From contig OZ286461.1 in NCBI GenBank assembly GCA_965644265.1, forward strand, positions 43,214,001-43,278,000: DNA of 64,000 bases, read 5' to 3'. The notes below the pieces were generated by a model. That model was not told where the DNA came from, did no database searches, and worked only from the letters and a program-made list of their open reading frames with translations. This DNA comes from Glycera tridactyla (lineage: Eukaryota). Positions 13,692 through 57,648 of this stretch are shown here, in pieces. How positions within the stretch are numbered: position 1 is the stretch's first letter; every line of letters starts with the position of its first letter. The position numbers were made by a program, and so were the translations under genes.

Positions 13692-16600
13692 CTGAAACAG
13701 ATGAGATTAGAATCAGAGAGAAGGTCTGTGGTGACAACTAAACAACATCAAGTTGGTGAAAAATTGACCCATCTACTACATCATTGTATGAGTCAAATGT
13801 CGTGAATACATCATTATATCTGAACCTGTTATGACCTACCATTTTCTGATTTTTAGCTGTTTCTTTGCATGGCTAGATGTGTATGTCTGTTAACTCGTAC
13901 TCGGAATGTGGTCCACAAAAACTGCTTCATTGATCCATACTCACAATGTTCAGTCATACTCACAATGTTCAGTTATACTCACAATGTTCAGTTATACTCA
14001 CAATGTTCAGCATATGTCTGACATGGAAATTAACTGGTCATCTGATTTGAGATAAGAGGGGTGAAGCAAAATGATGCCTAGGCAATGACAATATACTCTG
14101 ATGTTGATGTCCAGTGTGTGCGAAAGGAATCGACCCCTGACCTCATTATGCAACTTCCCTGACTAGATGCCATGAAATCACTCAAAGATATATAAGATTC
14201 CAACCTCAGTTGAACTGAATATGTGTACCGTGGCAGCACCATGATTAGGTGGTGGTGCACTGTGTTTTGTAAATACCTGATTTTTGTTTGTTTTGTTGGG
14301 GGTTCAACGTCACGTCAGCTCCATCTGGGCTATATTGTGACGCCCATGCAATGGGCATGGGTGGGATCATTCAAGACTCCTCCTTCTGGATCCCCAACAG
14401 AAGGCGAAAATTTATGAAATTCACAGACACTCAAGGTGTCATTTCAGTTATTGTAAATACCTGATCTTATTGTTTGTAAATAAATATTTGAAAAACTCGT
14501 ACTCGGAAGGGGAGGATATAGTCTTCGGACGTCCTCCCTGCCAAACATGCAGCTTAAAGCATGTACACATGGCACTCCCATGGTCCTGCGTTTGTCTCGC
14601 TGCTTCCTCGACATGACATTAACTCCGAATCAAATGTATTATTTTATCATCAACATTTCATATGTGCATCCTTCCAATATTATCATCTCTATGGACGACG
14701 GGCGTGAACATTGTTCTTGGTGGATCCGTTGTGATTTTAACAACCGGAAGTACTCAAACACGTACAGTGAAACATCCGACGGGAGACCGCTTTTGACAGA
14801 GTCAAATATACCTCCAACGAGAGACCACCTCTTTTGAGAGACCACTTTTCAGTCACATTTAGGGCGGTCTCTTGTCACAGGTTTCACTGTACAAGCGACG
14901 ATTATTGTCGTCACGGTTGCTGATCTCCAAGATGGCGGCGGCGGCGGCGGTGAGTTCAGATTGTGTGAGGCTTATAACTGATAAATGGTTGGTTTCCGCT
15001 ACTCGTTTCCGCCCCGCTTGCCACCGACAAGTTGCTACATACGGGTATTTGAGTAGAACAAGTGATGAGCGCTAGACTTCTGTCGTTGAGCAACACATTG
15101 AGTAATGCACCCGACATGGACTTACATCGATCATCCAATCTCCTCTGACCTGATTATAAATCAATATATTGACTCATTCCTCTCACGAAGAGGGACATTT
15201 ACTCACTCATTGCATCATGTCATTATTGAGCTTAGGTCTGTCCGAGTTGCAATTAGCATTCGCGCCTTGATTCGGCGAGCTTGCTCTCTTGTGATACATT
15301 TTCACGCCTTTCATCCGCGTTAATACAATGTCATATTGAATCACTCACAAATCTTGTTGCCAACATTGAGTCGATTGATTCATTTTCATTGAAGGTATTT
15401 GTTAAAGAAGCAGGCGAGGTTGGGTAGAATATATGCATCCACCTTGTTGCCGATATCAGTGTCGGGGCTTCGTGCTCATTCTTGTTCCACCGTAGTACCC
15501 GTATGTAGCTAGCATCGGGTATTGTGGGAACGAATAGCGGAGAAGGAGCTATTGACCTACCCCATTGTTTATTGTGACAGATCTCAACTCTGCCGGTGTC
15601 CCCATTAGCATCGCCGAGACGCACCTCATTCTCGGTCGAGCAGAGCAGGTTTTCGTCCCAATCACACAGTACCCCAGCATGTGTGCCGTCAGTACAGGTA
15701 AACCCATCCGCGAGGGCGACGGTAGCCGGGCAAGCGGTGAAATCTGCCTCGTCCCCCACACACAGGAGGTTGTCGAACAGGACACCCGTACCGGCCTCGA
15801 AATCGGCCATCGCCCCGCTGTAGAAGTCCAAGTCTCGACAGATGACTCGCGCTGTTTCCACCGTGAATTCGTCTTTGCAGATCGCACCTGGACATGGAAT
15901 ATATATCAGTGACATATTTGGAATGAGCTTGCCATGGCACGCAGATATATTGTCCAGCACCACGTGATGTTTGAGGCCCAATAGTAAGACAGTACTATTA
16001 CTTTCACTACTACCGATATTGCTACGACTACGGCTGCTAANNNNNNNNNNNNNNNNNNNNNNNNNNNNNNNNNNNNNNNNNNNNNNNNNNNNNNNNNNNN
16101 NNNNNNNNNNNNNNNNNNNNNNNNNNNNNNNNNNNNNNNNNNNNNNNNNNNNNNNNNNNNNNNNNNNNNNNNNNNTAATACTACTACTACAACTAATACT
16201 ACTACAACTAATACTACTACTACTAACACTACCACCGCCACCATCTNNNNNNNNNNNNNNNNNNNNNNNNNNNNNNNNNNNNNNNNNNNNNNNNNNNNNN
16301 NNNNNNNNNNNNNNNNNNNNNNNNNNNNNNNNNNNNNNNNNNNNNNNNNNNNNNNNNNNNNNNNNNNNNNNNNNNNACTCACCAGATCCGATGTTGGTGC
16401 AGAATTCCACGCGGCCTGAGTAGGGTTCTCCGTCCGCTGTGCTTAGCCCACCTACCAGTTGCAGTCGAGCACTTCCATCAACGCAGGGTGGTCCACCGCA
16501 CAGTAGACCAACATCCCGCGAGTGTGCGCACGTGTTGGCACCCCAACCGTTAAAGGGACACTCGTGGATAGCTGTGTTCGTGCCATCGCAGGTGATGTCG

Positions 16601-40200: not shown

Positions 40201-43200
40201 CAGACCTCTAGCCTACCCTCGGATGTGACGTCATTGCTGCCTACTAGTCGGAGGGCGTCATTGACGTCACAGTCGGAAGTGTCCATGTAGCAATCGACGC
40301 CAACATCTTCTCCGTGTTCGCAGTTATGGACCGCCCAGCCGCTGAATTGACAGCTTGAGAAGGAAGCTTCGGTGCCCGAACAGTCGACGTCGTCCATCCA
40401 TATAGGACCTCTCCCGCCGCCCACTCGAACTACGTTGCCAGCATTGTAGCCGAAGTTCGAACAGACCACCTTCGCGTCTACCTCGCTGAACTCATCGTCG
40501 CATATTGTGCCTTAGGGATTACATAAGATGAGAGATATAAGAAACTATTATTGCACGAGAAAGAACACTTATATCCGACCCCAGAAGGTCACATAACACG
40601 CATATGCAAACAAACAGGACCATAATAGAACAGTCATCTAGATACATCGTGAATTACATTAAGAGGTGAGAATATTTCACATTGGCGGAGTTTACACTTT
40701 AAGGTCTAAGGTCTAGCGTGGGCTATAATGATATAGCGTGCAGATTCAGGTCTTCACTTCAGTAGGAATAGTAGCGATATGCTTATGAGCGGGAGGATCG
40801 CAATGCCATGTCCGCAATGTCATTCATTACACTAAGCTCCTTCCTCGAGTTCTAATTGACTTGATTGATTGGCTGAATCTCCACATTTAGACAGTTACAA
40901 CTAGATAACAATAGCAAATATATAAACAACTTTTCTATCTCGTTCATAAACATAATACTGAGAGTCTGTATCACAGCTGGAGTGATTGATTCTTTGTGTT
41001 AATCAGACAGACTGTGGTGTTGTGAAGCTCCTTTTTCAGTGCGCGCTTGAAAGTATTGGTTGACTTGCTACCTCTCAATGACCTTTCAAGAGAATTCCAG
41101 TAGGAGTCCCACATCTGTGGAATGGAGGTTATCCCATGCTGACTGAGGCATTGGAACTAGCTCGCGTTTGGACTGCATGACCCTGCCTACTTTTCCTTGT
41201 GAGCCTGTAGTGGAGTTGGGATCACTTGGAGGTTTCAACATGAGCGGCTCTATAAACTTCAAAAAGATCATCATCAATCCCGACTGATTTCAGTTGGGGT
41301 ATTTCCAAGTTGTGTAGATCAGTTGCCTTAGAGGAAGATTCAGAGAATGTATCATTCATCCATTGATTCATTCTTTTCTTCATTTCTTCATCTATTAGTT
41401 TGATTCGTCACTCATTAATTCATTCGATCTTTCATTCGGTCAGCCATTCGTTCCTTCCTTTTATTGTTTGTCCATTTATCACCACTCCCCCTTACAATGG
41501 CTTCCACTTCCTCATTCACTATGTATCTTCCCAGCATGCGCACGTGCTCGTCTTTTTCACTTCCTCACTTATTATCTGTCTACCTCCAGCACTCTTGCTT
41601 TTTTTCACTCCCTCACTCACATCTTGTCAATTTCACAATCACCCCTGCTTGTCTTCTCACTTCCTCACTCAATACTCGTCTTACCTGGCGGCAATTTTGT
41701 ATGTCCTTTTCACTTCCTCACTCAATACTTGTCTTACTTGCCTGCCCTTTTGCTTGTCTTTTCACTTCCTCACTCAATACTTGTCTCACCTGCCAGCACT
41801 CTTGCTTGTCTTTTTCACTTCCTCACTCAATACTTGTCTCACCTGCCAACACTTTTGCTCGTCTTTTTCACTTCCTCCCTCAATACTTGCCTCACCAGCC
41901 AGCAATTTTGCTTGTCCTTTTCACTTCCTCACTGAATACTTGTCTTACCTGCCAACACTCATGCCTGCCTTTTCACTTCCTCACTCAATATTTGTCTCAC
42001 CTGCCAGCACTTTTGCTCGTCTTTTCTCTTCCTCGCTCAATACTTGTCTTTTTCATTTGCTTATTCATCATTTCACCTGTTCACTCATTTCCTGTCTCTC
42101 CCGCCTCCGCTTTTGCTCGTCTTTTGCTGTTTCATCACTCGCTATCCCTCTCCATTCGTCCTTGCTGATCCTCCAGCGGATCATTCTTACTTCATCATTG
42201 AATCAAGATGCATTCGCTACTCACCCCAGATTTCATCATGAAAGATTTCCACCCGCTTGGCCTGCTCATCCGACACAGAAACTAATCGAAGGAGTCCTTC
42301 CTCATCGATGGCCTCTTCGTTTGCTTCGGAAAACCGCTTCTCAGAACAGATGATACCAATGTCTTCAGTATGAAGGCACTCAGGAAAGTCATCGAAGGTG
42401 CAGCTCTCTAGAAAACTCGTCGTAGTGTCGGGACAGGAGACCTCACTGAGGAAGATAGGCCCAGTGCCTTCACCGAACATCTTCGTAGGCCTTGCATACC
42501 TGTCACCAAAATTAAGATCCCGACAAATTGCCTTCGCTTCCGCCTCGCCGAAACCGTCATCGCACACCGTCCCTGTGAAAAAAGGTCACTCAGTTAGGTT
42601 TCAGTTTGAAATCGTATCAGTGCCGGATTTGGCTTTTTATGAGGCGATGATGGCNNNNNNNNNNNNNNNNNNNNNNNNNNNNNNNNNNNNNNNNNNNNNN
42701 NNNNNNNNNNNNNNNNNNNNNNNNNNNNNNNNNNNNNNNNNNNNNNNNNNNNNNNNNNNNNNNNNNNNNNNNNNNNNNNNNNNNNNNNNNNNNNNNNNNN
42801 NNNNNNNNNNNNNNNNNNNNNNNNNNNCCAAACATCACCGTTGAAGATCTCCACCCTTCCACTATAACGGGACGTTCCTCCAACGAGACGAAATTGACCC
42901 ATGTCGTTGGCACAAGCAATTCCGATATCTTCATCATGTGTGTCACAGAGTGTGACGGGATCCTCCTCATCCGCCACGCATTCTGATGCAAATGTGTCGC
43001 TTGATACGCAATCATCTTCGAAATGGTAGATGGTTCCCGTGCCGCTGGTAAATTTCCTCACATCCGTCGCCCGGCTGAATCCTAGCTCTCGACAGATGGC
43101 ATCTGCCTCGGCGCCCATACTCACGAAATTGTACGCGCAGAAAGTGCCTGATTATATGCAAAAATGGGTCACAGTGGTGCATGACGCTTGTGTGTGTGTG

Positions 43201-46200
43201 TGAGAGGGAGGGAAAGAGAGAGAGGGTGAGTGAGAGAGAAAGAATGTGCGTGGGAGAGGGAGAGAGAGGGAGAGAGAGGGAGAGAGAGTGAGAGAGAATG
43301 AGAGAGTGAGAGGGAGTGAGAGAGAGGGAGGGAGGGAGAGAGAGAGTGAAAGAGTGAGAGAGCGAGAGTGAGAGAGAGAGTGTGGAAGAGAGAGTGAGAG
43401 AGACAGAGAGAGGGAGGGAGAGGGAGAGAGAGGGAGAGAGGGAGGGAGAGAAAGAGAGAGGGGGGAGAGTGGGGAGGGGCCAGACAGACGGACAGAGACA
43501 GAGATATAGAGTGAGAGGGAGATCCTCTACCGTGGTATTCTAATAGTGACAGAGAGTCCCTATGGAAGATCAACATGAAGAAGATGAAAGATGGTGGCAC
43601 AAGTGTTCGTGTTCCCTGTAGGGTTTTCCTTAGGGTGCCGTAGAGCAGCTATTTGGCTACTTGTCTATCACGGCGCTTAATACACAATCCAGTATCTCCT
43701 CCAAATTATGCATTTGCCCCAGGTAGGTATCAACACCCAGGTCAAACAAGTAAACCCAGGGAAGGACAGCCATTCAGTGAGGTGCTTTTTAGTTTGGATG
43801 ACATCTAGTGGCACCGAGCAAAACTATAAGTTCCCCGTCATTCCTCAGATGACTGATACGTCGGATCAATCTGAATTTACGATACAGATCCATGAAACAT
43901 GTATTTTTTCCAATATTCTCTCAGGATATAAAAATATTTCATGGGGTAACCTGATACTGACACGATTTTCATGAGATGGACATAGCCATTCATATTGGTG
44001 GGAAGGTCTTTGTTTTTAAGAATCTTCCTGAGAAAATCATCAGCCATGATTGTAATTTTTCAGTGAATCATATGCCTACTCACATGATTTCGGACTAACT
44101 GCAGCTCAATTATGGGGGGAAAATGGGAACTTTGTTCTTCACAAGTCACATTTAATGTGGAGAATAACTTGTTGAGTTGTATATGTCATATTGATGCTGA
44201 AAAAACATCGAACTATATCCCATGAGCACAGAAATTTCCATGGTGATAGAAACAGGAATTAGAATGTTCGTCACTGCAAGTGCCGCCATCTGTTGATACG
44301 GGAAAATCACCTGGTGGATATATTTAGAACCTTATTCTGTTATCCTCTATATCGGGGATTGATAAACTGCTCCGAAGGTTACCCTAGCACGGAGATCATC
44401 TTTCGAGGGAGTTTATCAATGGGATATGATAATGATGTGAAATGATACAACTACCTCTCCAGGAGGTCATCCGTTCGCGATATGATAAAGGGTGGCGTTT
44501 GTGAACAGGTTCATCCATAGATGATGCATTAACTCACCCCAGGCGTCGTTACGGAATATCTCCAGCCTCCCAGAATCTGGCTCATCCAATTCCCCACTGG
44601 CCGGGGTCTTGCTAGGGATCAGTCTCAGCTGACCTTCCGTCTCAGCTGGTATGCAAAGGACACCAACATCCTCATGATGATGGCAATTACTTATTTCCCA
44701 TCCACCATGTCCACAATCAACTAGTTCCTCGCTCTCTGAATCGTCACATGCGACGTCATCAAGCCAAATGATGCCACGACCTCTAGCGGAATCTTTACCA
44801 AACTCTCTCACCACTTTGGCACTTCCGCCCCCCAGGCCTAGTTGATCGCAAATCACATTCGCGTCCTCCTCGTCGAAATCATCATCGCAAACCGTACCTT
44901 TTGATATAAAATTCGGTCATTGAAGTGGTCAGTGGAGTATTATAGGTAATATCATACACCCCTTTAGCACATGGAAAATAACCCCAGTGTTGGAAGTGCC
45001 ATGGTTGATATCATATACCCCTTTATCACATTGGAAACGGCCCCAGCGTGGGGAGTGCCAAGGGTAATATCGCAAACCCCTTTATCACATGGAAAACGGC
45101 CCCAGTCTGGGGCGTGCCGTGGGTAATATCACATACCCCATTATCACATGGAAAACAGCACCAGTATGACACATTCCAATGAAGATGATTCTTATCACTA
45201 TTTTGCCATGTTTTACAAGTGTACATATGGGAATGAAAGCAAAAACTGTTGATATAATATTCAATGACAGTCGGCAATCTCTGGTTCAAATACCTGATAC
45301 TCATATCGGAGAGCCTAGTTACTGGCATGTCAGTAACACCCCTCCACGTGCTCACCAAACCACCCTCGCATCACTTCCAGGCTCTTTTGTGTAGTGATAC
45401 TGAAACCTGAACTGTGTTTGCAAGTTCTCAACATACAAGTGGAAGGTGTGAGCGGAACATATCGCCTTGCGGCACACCACTATGTAGGCCAGGACTGCTG
45501 GTGTTTTGCCCTACTACCCTACACATCTCTCATGGTCTTTACGCTGTCCTATGTTGCTATGACGGATTACTGGCTATGACTCTTGGTTCACTCATTGTAG
45601 CCTTGACTGCAATACCTATATGAATTTGATCCTGCAACCTCCTATATATCTGTTTGAATGTCACTGAGATATCAAGGAATGGATATAGATGTAGTGGTTT
45701 ACAGTCTAGCAATTTGATCCAACCTTACAATAACATTCCTTGACAGGCCTATTCAAGCTTGAGCCTTTTCATCTCCCTGAAATATAAAAACCAGGGGATA
45801 CTAGCTTGAGCTAGTCACTCTACGATCACCATCCCTGTCTATAGCCAAGTACCCATTCCCACCTGAGTAAAGTGGAGTGATGGAGTACAGATAATTCACT
45901 CGATTATCTTCACATACTAAGAAGCGCAGATTATCAAGATCCGTGTCATGCTGCAGGTCGAGTGATGAATGGTGAGCCTTATTCTTTATGGTCTGTCATT
46001 CGAACAGTAGCCCAATTTATAGTTACAAACAATTCTCGTACCCTGAGAACTGGAGTAAGTACAGGTAACACATACTCACCCCACTCGAGGTTGTGGCAGA
46101 TTTCCAGTCGACCCGAGCGATGCCCATCATTTCCAAGTCCGTCGACAAGGCGGACATGGCCTTCGTGCCTCTGTAGACAAGCTAGATCCACCCCTTCACA

Positions 46201-48784
46201 GCTGATCCAAACGTCCCTCTGATGACTGCACTGATTCTCGCCGGAGTCGGTATAAGGACAATCACGCAGCCTGGCCTCATCACCCTCACAGTCCACGCCG
46301 CGTCTCCACACAGTCCCTCCACCACCACCGATCTGAGTCAACACTTCTCCAGTGGCATATCCCATCTGCTTGCAAGCCACCATTGCATCATTGTCGTCAA
46401 AACCTTCATTACATATCGTTCCTAAAGTGAGAAGAAAAGGGACCTCCCATCTAAGATGAGGTATTCTCAGCAGATTGTATAAGTGTGGTCGCTAAATAGG
46501 TTCTGATTGATCATACTTCATTCTGATCCGTCTATACATTGTATTATCACATGGATGTGTCATTTTCAGTGAAGTATCAGGTGATGAGTATTGTGCATGT
46601 TACTTCACAGCTGGGTGAGGACTACTTTTTGACAATTTCTCCCCTAATCCATGTGATAAAAGCAAGAATATATGGCTGTGAGGTAAAAATGCAATACCAA
46701 ACTCGGTCTAAATTTCGCTGGATGTCAAGAGGCCGCATGACATCCGGCGAAATTCACACCTTGTTTGGTATTGCGTTTCTACTTCACAGCCATATGTTCT
46801 TGCTATATGTACGATAACAATTGCCCCAAAGTGGCTCCTCCAGTATGGAGGGGTCGGGGTTGAACGAAATATGTTGATTGAAAGGATCGAGTCTTCCATG
46901 AATTACACATCACCTCATCACAGATAGGCATTCCTAACAGGAGGTATAGATGTAGTTGGTTGATCAATTGATTGATTCATTGATTGATTGGCAGTAATCG
47001 ATAATTGGTTTGATTGGTTTGAGTTAAATGGCATATTTCAACCCAAACGATGATGATGTTTGCCAGGTGTTCCCGATCTCACCACCACAGATAAGGCATC
47101 CTTGGCAGGGGATATATGTTTGGGCAATTGATTGAGTGATTGAGTGATTGAGTGATTGGTTGATTGTTTTCGGAATAGACCACCCGGGAGAATAATGTTT
47201 GTCGTGTGATTCAGATCTTCTCACCACAGGTAGGCCAGTCTCAGCAGAGGCTAGGAGTGTTGCTGGTTGATTGATCGATAGATTAGAGTTGAACGAAGTA
47301 TGTTAATCAGGAGGGTCATGTATCACTGATCACCTCATCACAGATGAGGCAATATGTGTGGCCAATCTATCGATTGATCGGTTAGAGTTGAACGGAATAT
47401 AGACGTTGACAGCAATTCATGGAGGTGCTTACTGGCTAGAGTGACACCTAGTGTCAACTCTTATAAGGGGTTTCTTCTCTCCCCGTGTTTAATGACTGAT
47501 ACAATAACGTGATCAGAATCTATGATAAAGATATGCATGGCCTTCAGGACTGGTGGATTGTTCTTCTTTTGAATCATAATGATGATGGTGATGATTTCTC
47601 AGTAAATGAGAGGATTGAACAGCTGCGTCGGCACTGGCTGTAATTCAAGTACATGAAGTGTACAATGGATTTTTGCACTTCATTAGACACATATAATGAT
47701 CAGAATGACTTATGAAGTGAGATATATCATATCGATTCCGGAAAAGCACTCATAATCATACTCCACAATCTCACAGATTCCCATGGTATTGATGACAAGA
47801 GCGTGAAAGGGCACAGCAAGAATCTGTAAGATGTCATCATTTTGATGATGGATTTATGGTGGGACATTCAGCTACAACTAGAAGATCGCATCATATGATT
47901 GGCGTCAATGAATTGTAATTCATTTGAAGCCAGGCGACATTAATAGCGCCCACCACATACGAAGGGGAGGCGGGAGCATCATGAATGAAGGGACATCGTA
48001 AATGTCTTTCTCACACATGGTGTCATTTCTTTTTATGAATGATAAGGGCACGTTACTAATTATTATTGTATTCATACATGCATAATTCATACCACACCAA
48101 GAGTGCTACCTTCACTCAATGGGAGTAAGCCCACAAAAGTCACCCATACATGTCCATCGGCGGTATAAGAGCAAGAATGCATGGTAATACAACGAGTCAT
48201 ATCCCAATTGTGATCCTGCCATGTGATTTCACTATTTTGAATAAGCAATGACACTATTTATAAAAAGCTACGTTGTTTGGTGGTAGCAATAGAACGGGAT
48301 AATCAGTATATTGAATTGATTTAATTGCCCATTTGCTCAGTTTCCATAATGTCTAGATTAACTTTGACACGTCAGATTAGATACAGAGAGTGAGTAACTG
48401 AGTGGCGATTCATTTATACACGGGGGAAAGCCAGCACAAGAGCTGTATTCTACATCTCCGAGTACAGGTACCACAAAGATAACTCCACATCGATGAAAAG
48501 TTATTGACAGTGCTCAGGGGGGGGGGGGGGCGATTCCTCTGCCAACAGAATTTACGATGATTGCTTAAGAGAATTTGCAAGCAAATTCTACCCAAAAAAA
48601 AACAGGGAGTGGACGTTAGCTCATGGCAAGTGCCATATTGTGTCGATACAGTGAAATATCTGGAGCTGAATGGGCACATCCTCTATACTAACCGTAATTG
48701 TAATGCTTGAATTGTTTTCCAGATCGCCATCATCAAACCTGAGGCATTCTTAGTATAGGGTAAAGTGTGGCTATCACATTGATC

Positions 48785-48816
<32 letters not shown>

Positions 48817-51800
48817 GGTTATTGGACGGCATATGTCAACCCGATGAATACGTATGTCATGTGTTTCTGACCCATGAAAGCTGTATGTTCTCTTCGGATT
48901 TCATAGGTCAGGAATCTCTCTCATAAACCATGAAACCCAAGATGCTGGTGGAAACTGATCGAAATCCGACAGTGTCTCTAAATGCATGGAGGCCATTGAA
49001 AAGGAGTTTGATCTCGAGCCTGAAAGCAATGCTTTTGAGTGAAGCTTAGTTCCTGTAGCATTGAGGTGGTGGATGGGTAGGTAGATAGGTGGGTANNNNN
49101 NNNNNNNNNNNNNNNNNNNNNNNNNNNNNNNNNNNNNNNNNNNNNNNNNNNNNNNNNNNNNNNNNNNNNNNNNNNNNNNNNNNNNNNNNNNNNNNNNNNN
49201 NNNNNNNNNNNNNNNNNNNNNNNNNNNNNNNNNNNNNNNNNNNNNNNNNNNNNNNNNNNNNNNNNNNNNNNNNNNNNNNNNNNNNNNNNNNNNNNNNNNN
49301 NNNNNNNNNNNNNNNNNNNNNNNNNNNNNNNNNNNNNNNNNNNNNNNNNNNNNNNNNNNNNNNNNNNNNNNNNNNNNNNNNNNNNNNNNNNNNNNNNNNN
49401 NNNNNNNNGCAAGATCGGTATANNNNNNNNNNNNNNNNNNNNNNNNNNNNNNNNNNNNNNNNNNNNNNNNNNNNNNNNNNNNNNNNNNNNNNNNNNNNNN
49501 NNNNNNNNNNNNNNNNNNNNNNNNNNNNNNNNNNNNNNNNNNNNNNNNNNNNNNNNNNNNNNNNNNNNNNNNNNNNNNNNNNNNNNNNNNNNNNNNNNNN
49601 NNNNNNNNNNNNNNNNNNNNNNNNNNNNNNNNNNNNNNNNNNNNNGCAAGATAGGTATATNNNNNNNNNNNNNNNNNNNNNNNNNNNNNNNNNNNNNNNN
49701 NNNNNNNNNNNNNNNNNNNNNNNNNNNNNNNNNNNNNNNNNNNNNNNNNNNNNNNNNNNNNNNNNNNNNNNNNNNNNNNNNNNNNNNNNNNNNNNNNNNN
49801 NNNNNNNNNNNNNNNNNNNNNNNNNNNNNNNNNNNNNNNNNGTAGGCAAGTAGGTAGATAGCCAGATACCCGAGTATCCAGATGGGTAGTTGGGTCGCTG
49901 ACCAGCTTGCTAGGTAGCCGGTTAGCCAGGTAGGTAGCTAGTTGAGATGTATACTCACCCCACTCAGCTTCCTGGCAGATCTCGAGTCTTCCTTGAGTGC
50001 CATCATGTTGATTTTCAGCAGGAACTAAGCGGAGATCGCCCTCATACCCACCGTCTCCACAATAATCGGCCCCGATACAATCCACACCGACGTCTTCAGA
50101 GTGGCCACAGTTATGTGACCCCCACCCGTTATGTGGGCATTCGTCAATAGCGGCCTCAGTACCCACACATTCCACGTTATCCATCGCGATTATGCCAGTA
50201 CCACCCGCAAAGCTCTGAATATCAGTTCCTGTGTGGTAGCGCATTTGTCGGCAAACCACACTGGCACTGTCATCGTCAAAGCTATCATCACACACGCTAC
50301 CTGGATAAAACATACACATGAATCAGCGATGAACATGAGCACTCCGCCTATCTTCCATCCATTCATTTGTACATCCTCACTTCCGTGCATCCAACCACTT
50401 ATCCACCCATCCAGCCATCTGTTCATCCACCCATCATTCTATCCATCAACCCATCCATTCATTCATCCATTCATCTATCCATCCATTCACCATATCATTC
50501 ACCCACTTCTGGATGGATGCATNNNNNNNNNNNNNNNNNNNNNNNNNNNNNNNNNNNNNNNNNNNNNNNNNNNNNNNNNNNNNNNNNNNNNNNNNNNNNN
50601 NNNNNNNNNNNNNNNNNNNNNNNNNNNNNNNNNNNNNNNNNNNNNNNNNNNNNNNNNNNNNNNNNNNNNNNNNNNNNNNNNNNNNNNNNNNNNNNNNNNN
50701 NNNNNNNNNNNNNNNNNNNNNNNNNNNNNNNNNNNNNNNNNNNNNNNNNNNNNNNNNNNNNNNNNNNNNNNNNNNNNNNNNNNNNNNNNNNNNNNNNNNN
50801 NNNNNNNNNNNNNNNNNNNNNNNNNNNNNNNNNNNNNNNNNNNNNNNNNNNNNNNNNNNNNNNNNNNNNNNNNNNNNNNNNNNNNNNNNNNNNNNNNNNN
50901 NNNNNNNNNNNNNNNNNNNNNNNNNNNNNNNNNNNNNNNNNNNNNNNNNNNNNNNNNNNNNNNNNNNNNNNNNNNNNNNNNATAGCAGACTTCCACTCTG
51001 CCATGGTATTCATCGCTGTAGACACCAGGCCATCCGACGATACGAACATCTCCATTCTCATCGCATACCAGGTCTTCATCATAGCTACAGAAGACAGCGG
51101 CTGCCGGCGTACCCGCTGCCGTAACATCACACGAAGAGCTGGCCCATTGGCAGTCCGTCAGGCTGGATTCGTCGCCTGTACATATCGGTGATTCGGCATT
51201 CATTGACTCGGGGCCCCGGTCGTAATCAGCCAGTACTCGGCCATTGTCCTCTCCAAGCTGCCGACATACCACATCCGCGTCCATTTCGCTAAATTCGTGG
51301 GCGCAAAGAGTATCTGAAATGGAGAGAGTGAAGAGGTGCTCCTAACGATAGAACGATAAGCTACTATAGGCCACCCGATCACTATACTGTTACACCATTT
51401 TTACTATCTATATGATCTATGAAATGTATGCTTCGAAAGAAGCAATTATGGTAGATCTCCTGAGTGTTATAGTCACGACAACCATATTGTTGTGTTTCTA
51501 TATCGCCCGCAAAAGGACGTCTTTAGCACATATAAGGTATACTGGCTATCACATAAAGTCGACATGGACACTTGGATGGTTTAGTGTGATAGTCACAGCT
51601 AACCTCTATCAGCATGTGCATTTCAAGTGTCTGCCTTTGAAACCTGCATTTTGACATTTAATTGCTGTACTTCGTACTTCGTTTTACGAATCCTTGTTGA
51701 ATATTGTGTTGTATTCCCAATGAAGAAGAAGATATGTCGGTCAGGACCTCTTCATAATGAATTCAAATGAAAACATCTCATCTCATTTTATATCATGAAA

Positions 51801-57400: not shown

Positions 57401-57648
57401 GCAGGCTCAAACCGTGAATGTGTAAAAAGGGGCTCAACGTGCTGCTGAACTCGGTTTGACCAGACACTATGATACTTACACCATGTTGAACCAATGTAGA
57501 CCTCTACCCGGCCGTAGTTATCGTAGTCGCTGGTGGGTTGATCCAGGCGTACGTCGGTGACCACACTCAGCAACTGGCGCAGGGTGTTTGCTTTTATACC
57601 CTGGTAGCTTAACAAGAGCAGACAGAGGGTTATCCACTGCCGCGGCAT
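13435..57648 (-). CDS. Gene B: multi-SRCR protein, signal peptide + 22 tandem SRCR domains, about 2,490 aa, 26 coding exons, no TM seen (probably secreted)
   Basis: Exons (minus, high to low): 57648-57480, 51313-~50970, 50300-49959, 46421-46080, 44897-44538, 43147-~42827, 42572-42225, 40510-40184, 39698-39378, 39108-38943, 37350-37190, 35192-34863, 33679-33516, 33133-32923, 32367-32023, 30099-29773, 29294-28953, 26270-25944, 25069-24918, 21881-21695, 21044-20745, 20003-19677, 18695-18369, 16721-16383, 15887-15561, 13691-13435. All visible junctions are GT-AG and phase-compatible; every module keeps the six group-A SRCR cysteines. That all exons join into one transcript is inference. Confidence 0.8.
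13936..14010. repeat. 19-bp tandem repeat x4
   Basis: ATACTCACAATGTTCAGT[C/T]. Confidence 0.85.
14765..14889. mobile_element. Tc1/mariner-type MITE
   Basis: TA-CAGTGAAAC ... GTTTCACTG-TA: perfect 9-bp terminal inverted repeats with TA duplication. Confidence 0.75.
15561..15887 (-). CDS. Gene B exon 25 (SRCR module)
   Basis: 327 nt, GAICKDEF...GRVEICHNKQWG|GTAGGT. Confidence 0.92.
16383..16721 (-). CDS. Gene B exon 24 (SRCR module)
   Basis: 339 nt, GTFCDAGFD...GRVEFCTNIGSG|GTGAGT. Confidence 0.9.
18369..18695 (-). CDS. Gene B exon 23 (SRCR module)
   Basis: 327 nt, GTICDDGFD...GRVEICYQRDWG|GTATGT. Confidence 0.92.
18820..19050 (+). repeat. Same interspersed family as 7860-8150
   Basis: Shared CATCACTC.CACAAACCCT.CACACAAGATGA and TGGCATATCTAACT. 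Confidence 0.55.
19677..20003 (-). CDS. Gene B exon 22 (SRCR module)
   Basis: 327 nt, GTVCSEGFD...GRLETCAWNQWG|GTAGGT. Confidence 0.92.
20745..21044 (-). CDS. Gene B exon 21 (SRCR module)
   Basis: 300 nt, GTICNDGFA...GRVEICHNGVFG|GTGAGA. Confidence 0.92.
21289..21414. repeat. 42-bp tandem repeat x3
   Basis: GATGAATGGAATCCCCTTGATGATTCAGGGGAGAGTGCAGCT. Confidence 0.85.
21695..21881 (-). CDS. Gene B exon 20 (second part of split module)
   Basis: catgcag|GAA: EALSECEFSGW...GRLEVCYQQKWG|GTAGGT; 19+20 total 339 nt. Confidence 0.88.
22047..22150. repeat. Perfect 30-bp inverted repeat with 44-nt spacer (MITE-like)
   Basis: AGTAAGAAGTCCCGGCGGGGTGTGATCGGC at 22047-22076 and its exact reverse complement at 22121-22150. 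Confidence 0.9.
22730..24200 (+). repeat. Complex interspersed repeat block (modular subunits mixed with GA/GACA microsatellites)
   Basis: Shares long words with 54330-57000, e.g. GCCAGGTAGGTGTGCT.TCAAATCCATTCGTA, GCGCAGTGATCCATGAAACCTGG, CACGTGACACGATTTGGCGAAAGTAGTCCCGGC. Confidence 0.7.
24918..25069 (-). CDS. Gene B exon 19 (first part of split module; absent from the ORF track)
   Basis: caccag|GAACTGTTTGT: GTVCGTGINDEAADVICRELNYDFGIMAEPSTFGPGTGQIWMKDVDCPYNK|GTTAGA, phase 0. Confidence 0.85.
25944..26270 (-). CDS. Gene B exon 18 (SRCR module)
   Basis: 327 nt, GTICDDDFN...GRVEICKDGTWG|GTATGT. Confidence 0.92.
28124..28310. mobile_element. Tc1/mariner-type MITE
   Basis: CAGTAGAACCTG ... 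CAGGTTCCACTG-TA (11/12); internal GGTGGTTGCT subrepeats. Confidence 0.65.
28953..29294 (-). CDS. Gene B exon 17 (SRCR module)
   Basis: 342 nt, GTVCSDNFG...GRVEICMNDEWG|GTGAGT. Confidence 0.92.
29773..30099 (-). CDS. Gene B exon 16 (SRCR module)
   Basis: 327 nt, GTICDDLFD...GRLEICHDGRWG|GTAGGC. Confidence 0.92.
32023..32367 (-). CDS. Gene B exon 15 (SRCR module)
   Basis: 345 nt, GTICEDNFD...GRVEICHDNQFG|GTATGT. Confidence 0.92.
32923..33133 (-). CDS. Gene B exon 14 (second part of split module)
   Basis: ttgtag|TGT: CVGTEGSISDC...GRVEVCHATDHGALYWG|GTGAGT. Confidence 0.88.
33134..33515 (-). mobile_element. Intron occupied from its donor by a candidate introner-like element (copy 2)
   Basis: Same alignment as copy 1; the intron lies at a different codon of a different gene. 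Confidence 0.6.
33516..33679 (-). CDS. Gene B exon 13 (first part of split module, with Ser/Glu insert)
   Basis: GVICDDDV...QESSSESSSESQSSEEEDVPIVLDGVQ|GTTAGA, phase 0. Confidence 0.88.
34863..35192 (-). CDS. Gene B exon 12 (SRCR module)
   Basis: 330 nt, GTICESNF...GRVDICHSGEWG|GTAGGT. Confidence 0.92.
35830..36110. repeat. Degenerate interspersed repeat, homologous to 11940-12230
   Basis: Same shared words, same orientation. Confidence 0.45.
36282..36794. repeat. 19-bp minisatellite, about 27 copies
   Basis: Unit CCCCTACACCACGCAGCTC. Confidence 0.95.
37109..37200. repeat. Exact 46-bp tandem duplication that includes the exon 11 donor
   Basis: TGGTCTAGATGGCAAAGAAAATGAAGACTTCCTACCCCATCTATAA at 37109-37154 and 37155-37200. 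Confidence 0.95.
37190..37350 (-). CDS. Gene B exon 11 (second part of split module)
   Basis: gtgcag|T TTC CAA GGC TGG completes Ser; FQGWGDHNC...GRLEICHDYRWG|GTAGGA. Confidence 0.88.
37397..37658 (+). mobile_element. About 265-bp double-hairpin non-autonomous element, copy 1
   Basis: TTATCACATGGAT..ATCCATGTGATAA hairpin followed by AGCAAGACTATATG..CATATAGTCTTGCT hairpin; four copies in the window. Confidence 0.7.
38620..38780 (-). repeat. Same interspersed family as 7860-8150, inverted
   Basis: Reverse complement aligns to 7878-8000. Confidence 0.55.
38943..39108 (-). CDS. Gene B exon 10 (first part of split module)
   Basis: GTICGAY...VTDC-AG|GTCAGA, phase 2; with exon 11 totals 327 nt. 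Confidence 0.88.
39378..39698 (-). CDS. Gene B exon 9 (SRCR module)
   Basis: 321 nt, GTICEDEFS...VQVCHDSRWG|GTGAGT. Confidence 0.92.
40184..40510 (-). CDS. Gene B exon 8 (SRCR module)
   Basis: 327 nt, GTICDDEFS...GRLEVCHENKWG|GTAGGT. Confidence 0.92.
41560..42060. repeat. Degenerate about 53-bp pyrimidine-rich minisatellite
   Basis: TTTCACTTCCTCACTCAATACTTGTC recurs every 52-54 bp. Confidence 0.8.
42225..42572 (-). CDS. Gene B exon 7 (SRCR module)
   Basis: 348 nt, GTVCDDGFG...RVEIFHDEIWG|GTGAGT. Confidence 0.92.
42828..43147 (-). CDS. Gene B exon 6 (divergent SRCR module); donor hidden in N-run
   Basis: cag|GCACTTTCTGC; GTFCAYNF...GRVEIFNGDVW then Ns. Confidence 0.85.
43190..43520. repeat. 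(GA)n-rich tract
   Basis: Seen directly; similar tracts at 22820-22875, 23155-23235 and 54196-54250. Confidence 0.9.
44538..44897 (-). CDS. Gene B exon 5 (SRCR module)
   Basis: 360 nt, GTVCDDDFD...GRLEIFRNDAWG|GTGAGT. Confidence 0.92.
44945..45165. repeat. Degenerate about 58-bp tandem repeat x4
   Basis: ATATC...ACCCC.TTA.CACAT.GAAA recurs. Confidence 0.7.
46080..46421 (-). CDS. Gene B exon 4 (SRCR module)
   Basis: 342 nt, GTICNEGFDD...GRLEICHNLEWG|GTGAGT. Confidence 0.92.
46544..46807 (+). mobile_element. Double-hairpin element, copy 2
   Basis: Aligns end to end with 37397-37658. Confidence 0.7.
49959..50300 (-). CDS. Gene B exon 3 (SRCR module)
   Basis: 342 nt, GSVCDD...GRLEICQEAEWG|GTGAGT. 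Confidence 0.92.
50982..51313 (-). CDS. Gene B exon 2 (SRCR1 C-part/SRCR2 N-part); 3' end hidden in N-run
   Basis: catttcag|ATACTCTTTGC; YTLCAHEFSEMDADVVCRQLG...GRVEVCY then Ns. Confidence 0.85.
51834..52302. repeat. 41-bp minisatellite, about 11 copies
   Basis: Unit CCATCGAATGTGGGCAGTTGCCATCGGATGTAAGTCAATTT. Confidence 0.95.
52320..52850. repeat. (CTGA/CTCA/CCAA)n microsatellite field
   Basis: Seen directly. Confidence 0.85.
52880..53445. mobile_element. Palindromic MITE-like element with nested inverted arms
   Basis: 38-bp arms 52990-53027 / 53303-53340 (3 mismatches) plus outer arms about 52890-52950 / 53388-53440. Confidence 0.6.
54330..57000 (+). repeat. Complex interspersed repeat block, internally multiplied copy
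   Basis: Several copies of the subunits seen at 22730-24200, in the same orientation. Confidence 0.7.
57480..57648 (-). CDS. Gene B coding exon 1: signal peptide MPRQWITLCLLLLSYQGIKA + N-part of SRCR1
   Basis: ATG 57648-57646, acceptor 3 nt upstream (tttcacag|ACAATG); DVRL..YGRVEVYIGSTW; donor T|GTAAGT, phase 1; joins the next exon to give W-Y-T-L-C. Confidence 0.8.

What the first reader, a model, noticed from the sequence alone, without database searches (positions are those of the whole stretch)
15561..50300. The repeated exon is a circularly permuted SRCR unit; skipping any exon would make a chimeric domain in frame
Seen: there is no intron between domains; a phase-1 intron always splits the Gly of W-G|T-V-C. 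All 18 fully visible unsplit modules in the two genes are symmetric 1-1 exons with lengths divisible by 3 (300-360 nt). Established: vertebrate group-B SRCR arrays (DMBT1, CD163) use one exon per domain. Inference: duplication, deletion or skipping of an exon here joins the N-part of one domain to the C-part of another, so a 22-domain gene could yield many hybrid binding domains combinatorially. I have no transcript evidence that this happens.
Basis: partly seen in the sequence, partly recalled or inferred. Interest (0 to 1): 0.7.

Follow-up and report, generated by a model that had tools for sequence, protein, structure and literature searches.

The report
Offset exons in SRCR-repeat genes
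Two neighbouring animal genes for secreted proteins made of many SRCR (scavenger receptor cysteine-rich) domains use repeated exons shifted by about a fifth of a domain, so losing any exon would keep the reading frame, but the RNA available shows only the full, in-order transcript.

Summary
On the minus strand lie gene A (signal peptide plus 22 SRCR domains, then a stop) and the first six domains of gene B.

- **Exon structure:** 18 unsplit exons of 300-360 nt all have AG/GT splice sites, phase 1-1 and lengths divisible by 3. Each runs from G|T-x-C of one domain to W-G| of the next. Pfam SRCR matches begin at profile position 19-20 of 100.
- **RNA evidence:** transcript contigs from three samples of one study join five consecutive exons at the predicted bases and bridge two assembly gaps. 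One contig's length fits the whole array. No skipping joint was seen, though contigs can hide rare isoforms.
- **Disulfides:** all cysteine pairs appear to lie inside one exon. This includes an inferred fourth pair in the N-terminal hairpin, present or absent as a pair in 26 of 26 exon tails. Hybrid domains are therefore plausible but undemonstrated.
- **Age of the intron:** the same intron position occurs in other SRCR genes of this genome, often in the first domain only, so it predates the array.
- **Other species:** a Ptychodera flava SRCR gene has offset exons in another register, and an annotated isoform lacks exactly two of them.
- **Side finding:** two of the five extra introns are copies of a dispersed inverted-repeat element.

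Verdict: a new variant of a known kind, of moderate interest. Combinatorial splicing is unsupported.

The parts
57480..57648 (-). Gene A exon A0: start codon, signal-peptide-like segment and N-terminal hairpin of SRCR domain 1. Ends TGG T|gtaagt (phase 1, splits a Tyr codon).
   Evidence: Weak unit-HMM hit at 57576-57481. The RNA contig length fits this start.
50982..51310 (-). Exon A1, visible part. The 3' end is lost in gap 50523-50981.
49959..50300 (-). Exon A2, 342 nt, phase 1-1
46080..46421 (-). Exon A3, 342 nt, phase 1-1
44538..44897 (-). Exon A4, 360 nt, phase 1-1. Its tail lacks the extra Cys pair.
42828..43147 (-). Exon A5, visible part. The last few bases are lost in gap 42655-42827.
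42225..42572 (-). Exon A6, 348 nt, phase 1-1
40184..40510 (-). Exon A7, 327 nt, phase 1-1
39378..39698 (-). Exon A8, 321 nt, phase 1-1
38943..39108 (-). Exon A9a, 166 nt, phase 1-2 (module split by an extra intron)
37190..37350 (-). Exon A9b, 161 nt, phase 2-1
34863..35192 (-). Exon A10, 330 nt, phase 1-1
33516..33679 (-). Exon A11a, 164 nt, phase 1-0
33134..33515 (-). Extra intron A11x, 382 nt. It is a copy of a dispersed inverted-repeat element (5' GGTTAGAA..., 3' ...ATTCATACC). The element supplies the GT donor.
32923..33133 (-). Exon A11b, 211 nt, phase 0-1
32023..32367 (-). Exon A12, 345 nt, phase 1-1 (ends F-G)
29773..30099 (-). Exon A13, 327 nt, phase 1-1
28953..29294 (-). Exon A14, 342 nt, phase 1-1
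25944..26270 (-). Exon A15, 327 nt, phase 1-1. The donor is visible 10 nt before gap 25522-25933.
24918..25069 (-). Exon A16a, 152 nt, phase 1-0, donor AAG|gttaga
   Evidence: The RNA loose end at 21883 carries its last 30 nt.
22985..23047 (-). Decayed fragment of an SRCR module inside the A16 extra intron. The transcript contigs skip it.
21695..21881 (-). Exon A16b, 187 nt, phase 0-1
20745..21044 (-). Exon A17, 300 nt, phase 1-1 (ends F-G). Both joints seen in RNA.
19677..20003 (-). Exon A18, 327 nt, phase 1-1. Both joints seen in RNA.
18369..18695 (-). Exon A19, 327 nt, phase 1-1. Both joints seen in RNA.
16383..16721 (-). Exon A20, 339 nt, phase 1-1 (ends S-G). Donor G|gtgagt lies directly before gap 16247-16376.
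15561..15887 (-). Exon A21, 327 nt, phase 1-1. RNA joins it to A20 across two gaps.
13435..13691 (-). Exon A22: body of domain 22, 13 further residues, then a TGA stop. No membrane segment is seen.
8223..8406 (-). Gene B exon B1: start codon, signal peptide and N-terminal hairpin of its first SRCR domain. Ends W-G|gtgagg.
6090..6416 (-). Exon B2, 327 nt, phase 1-1
4881..5198 (-). Exon B3, 318 nt, phase 1-1
3984..4138 (-). Exon B4a, 155 nt, phase 1-0
3079..3247 (-). Exon B4b, 169 nt, phase 0-1
2521..2631 (-). Exon B5a, 111 nt, phase 1-1
2068..2520 (-). Extra intron B5x, 453 nt. It is a second copy of the same inverted-repeat element, flanked by ACAG ... CACAG.
1852..2067 (-). Exon B5b, 216 nt, phase 1-1
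1195..1436 (-). Exon B6: body of domain 6, ending CAG|gtaaac (phase 0). The gene continues outside the window with a Thr/Pro-rich linker exon and five more SRCR domains.

Best explanation
Two tandem genes encode secreted proteins made of SRCR domains.
- **Gene A:** signal peptide, 22 domains, then a stop, about 2,450 residues.
- **Gene B:** signal peptide, 6 domains, a Thr/Pro-rich linker and 5 more domains. The linker and the last five domains lie just outside the window.
- **Domain type:** group-A-like, with the six canonical cysteines. Most domains probably have a fourth disulfide that staples the N-terminal hairpin (inferred).

**Origin of the offset (inferred).** The subfamily's own intron sits inside the domain, in phase 1, at W-G|T. 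It separates the hairpin from the rest of the domain. The array probably grew by unequal recombination between copies of that intron. The unit copied was therefore an exon made of the body of domain n, the linker and the hairpin of domain n+1.

**Consequences.** The exons are symmetric, disulfide pairing stays within exons, and any gain or loss of an exon leaves a readable gene with complete domains. The offset is most simply a by-product of this history that makes the array tolerant to changes in copy number. It need not be a device for making isoforms.

**Shown versus inferred.** The exon anatomy, the splicing of five exons in order and the spread of the intron position among paralogues are shown. 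The mode of growth, the fourth disulfide and a DMBT1-like role in binding microbes or particles are inferred.
For: - **Exon map:** 18 of 18 unsplit exons are phase 1-1 and divisible by 3, with canonical splice sites.
- **Register:** Pfam and PDB alignments place the intron at profile position 19-20.
- **Canonical domain frame:** the first exons of both genes carry a signal peptide plus a lone hairpin. The last exon of gene A carries a lone domain body and a stop.
- **RNA:** joints fall at the predicted bases in three samples. Contigs of 5.6 and 6.1 kb have lengths that fit the full array.
- **Same intron in paralogues:** L001 is a six-domain gene with the same offset exons. L002, L003 and L004 have the W-G|T intron only in the first domain, with later domains fused in one exon. 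L005 shows it as well.
- **Independent gains look different:** the extra introns of five modules sit at five different sites and phases.
- **Cysteines:** the linker Cys and the Cys after V-E-I are both present in 17 tails and both absent in 9, never one alone.
- **Age:** the array is old. Mean identity is 38% for exon heads and 36% for tails.
Against: - No remnant of intron homology or head-tail co-ancestry could be detected. The Mantel correlation is r=0.00 for parts of the same exon and r=0.16 (p=0.14) for parts of the same domain. Growth by exon duplication therefore remains an inference.
- The W-G|T intron was not found in five SRCR genes from four other genome assemblies, so its age beyond this genome is unknown.
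- RNA was laid on only 6 kb, and only as contigs, which cannot show minor isoforms.
- The function rests on homology alone.
Confidence: 0.75

Rival explanations
1. One reading: the symmetric offset exons are used for combinatorial exon skipping, or somatic or germline copy-number change. One gene would then yield many proteins with hybrid SRCR domains as a recognition repertoire.
For: - Every unsplit exon can be removed in frame, and all disulfide partners stay within exons.
- Exon tails are as diverse as heads, at 36% against 38% mean identity, so swaps would change sequence.
- The tail carries the G-R-V-E-x(5-6)-W stretch. This corresponds to the VEVLXXXXW bacteria-binding motif of DMBT1, known here from the title of a paper cited in PMC3100851.
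- The Ptychodera flava isoform X2 lacks exactly two offset exons of a related gene.
- DMBT1 shows copy-number variation in its SRCR exons (PMC3100851).
Against: - Only adjacent joints appear in contigs of three samples.
- The length of the X2 contig matches the full array to within about 20 nt.
- A search for protein fragments of 60-190 residues found no near-identical product, so no fragment with a non-adjacent junction.
- Splice sites are uniformly strong.
- Only about a fifth of a domain would be exchanged.
Confidence: 0.1
2. The W-G|T introns were gained independently in each domain, by parallel insertion at a favoured site, after an intron-less array had formed. Under this reading they were not inherited by exon duplication.
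For: - This genome does gain introns in SRCR exons. Five extra introns exist, and two of them are copies of a mobile element.
- Paralogues L002-L004 have arrays without internal introns.
Against: - More than 25 introns share exactly the same codon position and phase. They use ordinary donors (gtgagt, gtaggt, gtatgt).
- The demonstrably independent gains sit at five different positions and phases, and three of them begin gttagaa.
- The same position is the single intron of the first domain in several paralogues.
Confidence: 0.07
3. The exon-encoded stretch is itself the folding unit, a true circularly permuted SRCR domain, so the canonical register does not apply.
For: Each exon contains every element of one domain in permuted order, and all its cysteine partners.
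Against: - Both genes begin with a lone hairpin after the signal peptide. Gene A ends with a lone domain body. This fits the canonical register and would leave orphan pieces in the permuted one.
- Alignments to CD163 structures run straight across domain borders in canonical order.
- The body of human SR-AI's SRCR domain alone misfolds (PMC3750411).
Confidence: 0.03

Closest known systems
Vertebrate group B SRCR arrays (DMBT1, CD163, WC1)
   Same: Tandem SRCR domains in secreted or surface proteins. The repeat exons keep the frame when removed. DMBT1 shows exon copy-number polymorphism and possibly alternative splicing (PMC3100851).
   Different: In group B one exon is one whole domain, DMBT1 has separate spacer (SID) segments, and the eight cysteines include the C1-C4 pair. 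Here the exon is shifted by about 19 of 100 domain positions and there is no intron between domains. The extra cysteine pair lies before strand 1 and after V-E-I, at positions other than those of group B.
Group A SRCR domains (SR-AI/MSR1, MARCO, SCARA5, Mac-2BP)
   Same: Six canonical cysteines, and a domain interrupted by an intron (PMC3100851, PMC3750411). The exon heads here align best with these single-domain structures, from about residue 27 onward.
   Different: These are mostly single domains. In the invertebrate relatives sampled, the intra-domain intron lies after C-R-Q-L-G-Y. In human SR-AI it falls between residues 371 and 407, judging from the constructs in PMC3750411. Neither is at W-G|T.
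Sea urchin and sponge SRCR multigene families (PMC10855680; Pancer 2000, not held here)
   Same: Large invertebrate expansions of genes with many SRCR domains, mostly group-A-like, arranged in tandem clusters.
   Different: The survey reports one exon per domain in the sea urchin and three per domain in the sponge, and describes no offset register. The one gene I fetched from assembly GCA_018143015.1 has whole-domain exons. I recall that assembly as Lytechinus variegatus; this is from memory and unchecked.
Ptychodera flava DMBT1-like gene (XP_070560705 / XP_070560707)
   Same: An SRCR array with one exon per repeat length, out of register with the domains. An annotated isoform lacks exactly two such exons (residues 401-618) in frame.
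   Different: Its register is after Q-L-G-Y, about 40% into the domain, not at W-G|T. The gene also carries a discoidin (F5_F8_type_C) domain. The isoform is a database prediction whose RNA support I could not inspect.
Repeat proteins whose exon borders fall inside the repeats (nebulin, cadherin, JAG1 EGF repeats)
   Same: The duplication or exon unit is out of phase with the structural unit (PMC1553488, PMC2725086).
   Different: These are different folds. In nebulin a block of four exons corresponds to seven domains, whereas here the relation is a strict one exon to one repeat length.
Introners (transposon-derived introns; PMC9860276)
   Same: For the two extra introns A11x and B5x: a multi-copy element with terminal inverted repeats and a short target duplication. 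It carries the 5' splice site and takes the 3' AG from the duplicated target plus the flank, so splicing restores the coding sequence.
   Different: I found no sign that the other 14 genomic copies examined lie in coding exons. The family may be an ordinary dispersed element that happens to be spliceable.

Membership tests
SRCR superfamily (Pfam PF00530) | Significant match to the SRCR profile above the curated cut-off | tested here: met
   Five exon-containing ORFs score 54-77 bits against a cut-off of 26.1. The genome scan gives similar scores for this locus.
SRCR superfamily (Pfam PF00530) | Six conserved cysteines in the canonical spacing | tested here: met
   The alignment of 21 exon heads shows six conserved Cys columns.
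Group A SRCR | [quoted passage not shown] | tested here: met
   Each domain is spread over two exons, with the intron at W-G|T. However, 17 of 26 domains carry two further cysteines.
Group B SRCR | Eight cysteines, including C1 just before G-R-V-E-V paired with C4 in L-G-C-G; one exon per domain | tested here: not met
   There is no Cys at the C1 or C4 positions (compare the CD163 alignment). The exons are out of register.
Class 1-1 mobile module (exon shuffling in Patthy's sense) | Phase-1 introns on both sides of an exon that equals one whole domain | tested here: not met
   The exons are symmetric 1-1, but each spans parts of two domains.
Splicing-based receptor diversification | Many alternative exon combinations observed in transcripts | tested here: inconclusive
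   Only adjacent joints appear in contigs of three samples over five exons. Contigs hide rare forms, and no raw reads were available.
Introner / transposon-derived intron (extra introns A11x, B5x only) | The intron is a copy of a multi-copy element with defined ends that supplies a splice site | tested here: met
   The genome search gave 872 first-look candidates, and all 40 scored matched at 72-79% identity. 32 of the 39 full-length hits other than the intron itself start at intron base 1.
Introner / transposon-derived intron (extra introns A11x, B5x only) | Family members are preferentially found as introns of genes | tested here: inconclusive
   Both full copies in the 64-kb window are introns in coding exons. 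The flanks of the 14 other copies examined show no excess of open frames in the sense direction, and ten flank ORFs gave no Pfam hit.

The most novel reading that the evidence does not exclude
The 16-18 symmetric offset exons are skipped or vary in copy number in different cells or individuals. One locus would then yield a repertoire of secreted SRCR proteins containing hybrid domains, with the bacteria-binding-type hairpin of one domain on the body of another. This would be an invertebrate route to recognition diversity.
Probability: 0.1. Interest if true: 0.75.

Novelty: new variant of a known kind. Interest (0 to 1): 0.4.

Why it matters
- **Unit of growth.** In this SRCR array the unit that evolution copies, and that splicing could remove, is not the structural domain but a shifted exon. 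That exon still carries all of its own disulfide partners.
- **Qualifies a textbook rule.** The rule is that group B uses one exon per domain and group A uses two. A recent survey states one exon per domain for sea urchins. This locus fits neither cleanly, and it is a warning for automatic domain and exon comparisons.
- **A testable idea.** Such arrays should tolerate exon gain, loss or skipping unusually well.
- **Transposon-derived introns.** Two newer introns in these exons come from a mobile element that brings its own donor site. A survey of 3,325 genomes found such introns in only two animal groups (PMC9860276).

Tried and rejected
- **Head-tail co-ancestry.** Mantel tests asked whether exon heads share history with the tail of the same exon or with the hairpin of the same domain. 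No signal either way.
- **Protein searches.** A search for products of 60-190 residues near-identical to exon A19, which might have shown odd junctions, found none. The representative search gave no close orthologue; the best identity to any exon was 55%.
- **Genomic loci of relatives.** P0001's gene range is too long to fetch. P0005, P0091, P0107 and P0075 are not on record.
- **Literature.** Pancer 2000 (PNAS 97:13156), the paper most likely to describe sea urchin SRCR exon structure, is not held. I cannot rule out that the offset was noted there.
- **Organism.** The protein atlas gave only generic SRCR clusters and no taxon. Earlier scan notes held nothing relevant.
- **Read laying.** I re-sent a stretch that leaves that piece out.
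- **Retracted idea.** I first took the W-G|T intron for the classical group A intron, because human SR-AI construct 371 ends near W-G. I dropped this. PMC3750411 places 371 inside exon 10, and four genes from Dreissena, Ptychodera and one assembly of unknown species split after C-R-Q-L-G-Y instead.
- **Element copies in coding exons.** The open-frame test and the Pfam scan of flanks found no evidence that other copies of the inverted-repeat element sit in coding exons.
- **Other extra introns.** A9x, A16x and B4x show no detectable homology to the element beyond the first seven bases.
- Structure prediction of real or hybrid domains was therefore not done.

Full report
**What is there**

The window is part of contig C7 of an unnamed 2.04-Gb animal genome. 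All SRCR coding sequence lies on the minus strand; a unit profile found none on the plus strand.

A profile built from the repeated unit finds 27 modules in the window. With the flanking exons they form two genes.

- **Gene A.** It starts at 57648 with a signal-peptide-like segment and the first hairpin of an SRCR domain. That exon ends TGG T|gtaagt. The gene runs through modules A1 to A22 and stops at a TGA at 13435, 13 residues after the last cysteine of domain 22. No membrane segment is visible, so I read it as a secreted protein of 22 SRCR domains.
- **Gene B.** It starts at 8406 with a clear signal peptide plus a hairpin and has six domains in the window. Just outside the window it continues with a Thr/Pro-rich linker exon and five more SRCR domains.

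**The observation**

Eighteen modules are unsplit exons, 16 in gene A and 2 in gene B. Each starts behind an AG that follows a pyrimidine tract and ends before gtgagt, gtaggt or gtatgt. Each is phase 1-1, and the lengths are 300-360 nt, all divisible by three.

Each exon runs from G|T-x-C-D-D of one domain to W-G| of the next.
- Pfam's SRCR profile matches each exon from position 19-20 of 100.
- Against solved structures, the exon aligns from G-T-V-C of one CD163 domain to W-G of the following one. In single-domain structures (SCARA5, MARCO, SR-AI, Mac-2BP) it aligns from about residue 27 onward.

The exon therefore holds the last four fifths of domain n, the linker, and the first fifth of domain n+1, the strand 1-strand 2 hairpin.

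Small corrections:
- The first intron splits a Tyr codon.
- Three exons end F-G or S-G.
- A20 is 339 nt.
- Five modules have one additional intron each.
- Gene B has one intron after a domain, next to its linker exon.

**Gaps**

All six gaps listed by the program lie in introns.
- **16041-16175 and 16247-16376.** They lie between the A20 donor (16383|gtgagt) and A21. Transcript contigs run from A20 straight into the first bases of A21 (loose ends at 16380).
- **22596-22725.** It lies in the extra intron of module A16. A contig carries the last 30 nt of A16a directly joined to A16b (loose end at 21883).
- **25522-25933, 29431-29585 and 32427-32637.** They sit between visible donors and acceptors.

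Elsewhere, gaps remove the 3' ends of A1 and A5. I filled no N and looked none up.

**RNA evidence**

Three runs of one study (coded X1-X3, organism A) hold spliced contigs of this gene. Their joints fall at 21695|21044, 20745|20003, 19677|18695 and 18369|16721, exactly as predicted. The contigs differ from the assembly by about 3%.

- X2 has a 6,101-nt contig with about 5,421 nt upstream of A16b. My exon lengths from the start codon through A16a sum to about 5,400 nt, with A1 and A5 estimated because of gaps. This fits a transcript that contains every upstream exon, with no exon hidden in a gap and none skipped. It is an argument from length only.
- No skipping joint was reported. Contigs drop rare variants, so minor isoforms are not excluded.
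- A search for near-identical protein fragments of 60-190 residues found none.

**Cysteines**

The six canonical group A cysteines are all in the exon head.

Seventeen of 26 exon tails carry two further cysteines, one 4-8 residues before the R-L strand and one directly after V-E-I. Nine tails carry neither, and none carries only one. The nine are A0, A4, A5, A6 and all five tails of gene B in the window.

I infer a fourth disulfide that staples the hairpin. It is not the C1-C4 pair of group B. Among the 150 best SRCR representatives only one, from the sponge Ephydatia muelleri, shows the same pattern throughout.

All presumed disulfide partners therefore lie within one exon. A domain assembled from non-neighbouring exons would have no unpaired cysteine.

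**History**

The array is old. Mean pairwise identity is 38% for heads and 36% for tails, and neither same-exon nor same-domain co-ancestry is detectable.

The W-G|T intron is not peculiar to this array.
- Another locus (L001, contig C4) is a six-domain gene with the same offset exons.
- Three further genes on C7 (L002-L004) have this intron only in the first domain and encode their later domains in one exon. L005 shows the intron too.

The intron therefore predates the array. The simplest history is a gene with one intra-domain intron that grew by unequal recombination between intron copies.

The five extra introns show what independent gains look like. They sit at five different positions with phases 2, 0, 0, 0 and 1.

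**Other species**

No sampled gene from another species has the W-G|T intron.
- A gene from assembly GCA_018143015.1 has whole-domain exons. I recall this assembly as Lytechinus variegatus; that is from memory and unchecked.
- Genes from Dreissena polymorpha, Ptychodera flava and one further assembly use two exons per domain, split after C-R-Q-L-G-Y.
- A second P. flava gene has lost the introns between domains. Its exons of 315-342 nt are offset in that other register. Its annotated isoform X2 lacks residues 401-618, which is exactly two exons.

Offset SRCR exons have thus arisen at least twice, and in-frame loss of such exons is at least predicted in a database.

The 2024 survey of invertebrate SRCR genes reports one exon per domain in the sea urchin and three in the sponge, and does not mention a shifted register. 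Pancer's 2000 paper could not be read.

Exon borders inside repeated domains are known for nebulin, cadherin and JAG1.

**Interpretation**

Several things argue against a diversification device. Only the full transcript is seen. The splice sites are uniformly good. Only a fifth of the domain would be swapped. The layout also follows directly from how the array would have grown.

The swapped fifth does contain the counterpart of DMBT1's VEVLXXXXW bacteria-binding motif, known here only from the title of a paper cited in PMC3100851. So the idea is not empty. I give it about 10%.

**Side finding**

Three of the five extra introns begin GTTAGAA. Two of them, A11x (33515-33134) and B5x (2520-2068), align along their whole length.

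They are copies of a dispersed element of about 450 bp. The genome search with A11x gave 872 first-look candidates, and all 40 scored matched. Thirty-two of the 39 full-length hits other than the intron itself begin at intron base 1.

The element has imperfect terminal inverted repeats (GGTTAGAAACCACCA ... TGGTGTATTCATACC) and a probable 4-bp target duplication, often T-N-N-A.

Its first G stays in the exon, and its GT serves as the donor. The acceptor AG comes from the duplicated target plus a following G. Splicing therefore restores the original codons, worked through for B5x. This is the mechanism described for introners (PMC9860276).

Both full copies in the window are such introns. The flanks of other genomic copies gave no sign of coding sequence. 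I call the element introner-like, not a proven introner family.

Noticed in passing
window 33134-33515 and 2068-2520 (minus strand): Two extra introns inside SRCR exons are copies of a dispersed element of about 450 bp, with 872 or more first-look candidates in the genome. It has terminal inverted repeats and a probable 4-bp target duplication. Its GT end serves as the splice donor, and the acceptor AG comes from the duplicated target plus the flank. This is the introner mechanism, which is rare in animals.
   Followed up: partly
window 21882-24917 and 37351-38942 (minus strand): Two other extra introns begin GTTAGAA and GTCAGAA, like the element, but show no further homology to it. The first is spliced out exactly in RNA contigs. 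Their origin is unknown.
   Followed up: partly
exon tails throughout, e.g. window 18369-18470, 15561-15660: A cysteine before strand 1 and a cysteine right after V-E-I occur together in 17 tails or are both absent in 9, never singly. This suggests a fourth, hairpin-stapling disulfide different from the group B pair. Among the 150 best database representatives, only an Ephydatia muelleri protein shows the same pattern throughout.
   Followed up: partly
window 22985-23047 (minus strand): A short decayed fragment of an SRCR module (unit positions 39-59) lies inside an intron. The transcript contigs skip it. It is probably the remnant of a lost exon.
   Followed up: partly
window 36278-36794: A very regular 19-nt tandem repeat, 27 copies at 98% match, in the intron between exons A9b and A10. 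It raises local GC to 51%.
   Followed up: no
window 37104-37200: A 46-nt direct duplication, 2.1 copies at 98% match, straddles the donor site of exon A9b. It could offer a second, frame-shifting donor.
   Followed up: no
window 19977-20376 and 18777-18976: Intron stretches with very high summed contig depth in the RNA runs (up to about 3,800) and many loose ends. They are probably expressed repeats and not part of the gene's mRNA.
   Followed up: no
just outside the window, L025:7700-7995 (C7:43213699-43213994): Gene B continues with an exon that encodes about 60 residues of Thr/Pro-rich, mucin-like linker before the next SRCR hairpin. It recalls the Ser/Thr-rich spacers of DMBT1.
   Followed up: partly
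L007 (Ptychodera flava, GCA_041260155.1, CM083789.1): An SRCR gene with repeat-length exons offset after Q-L-G-Y. Its annotated isoforms differ by exactly two exons (218 residues).
   Followed up: partly
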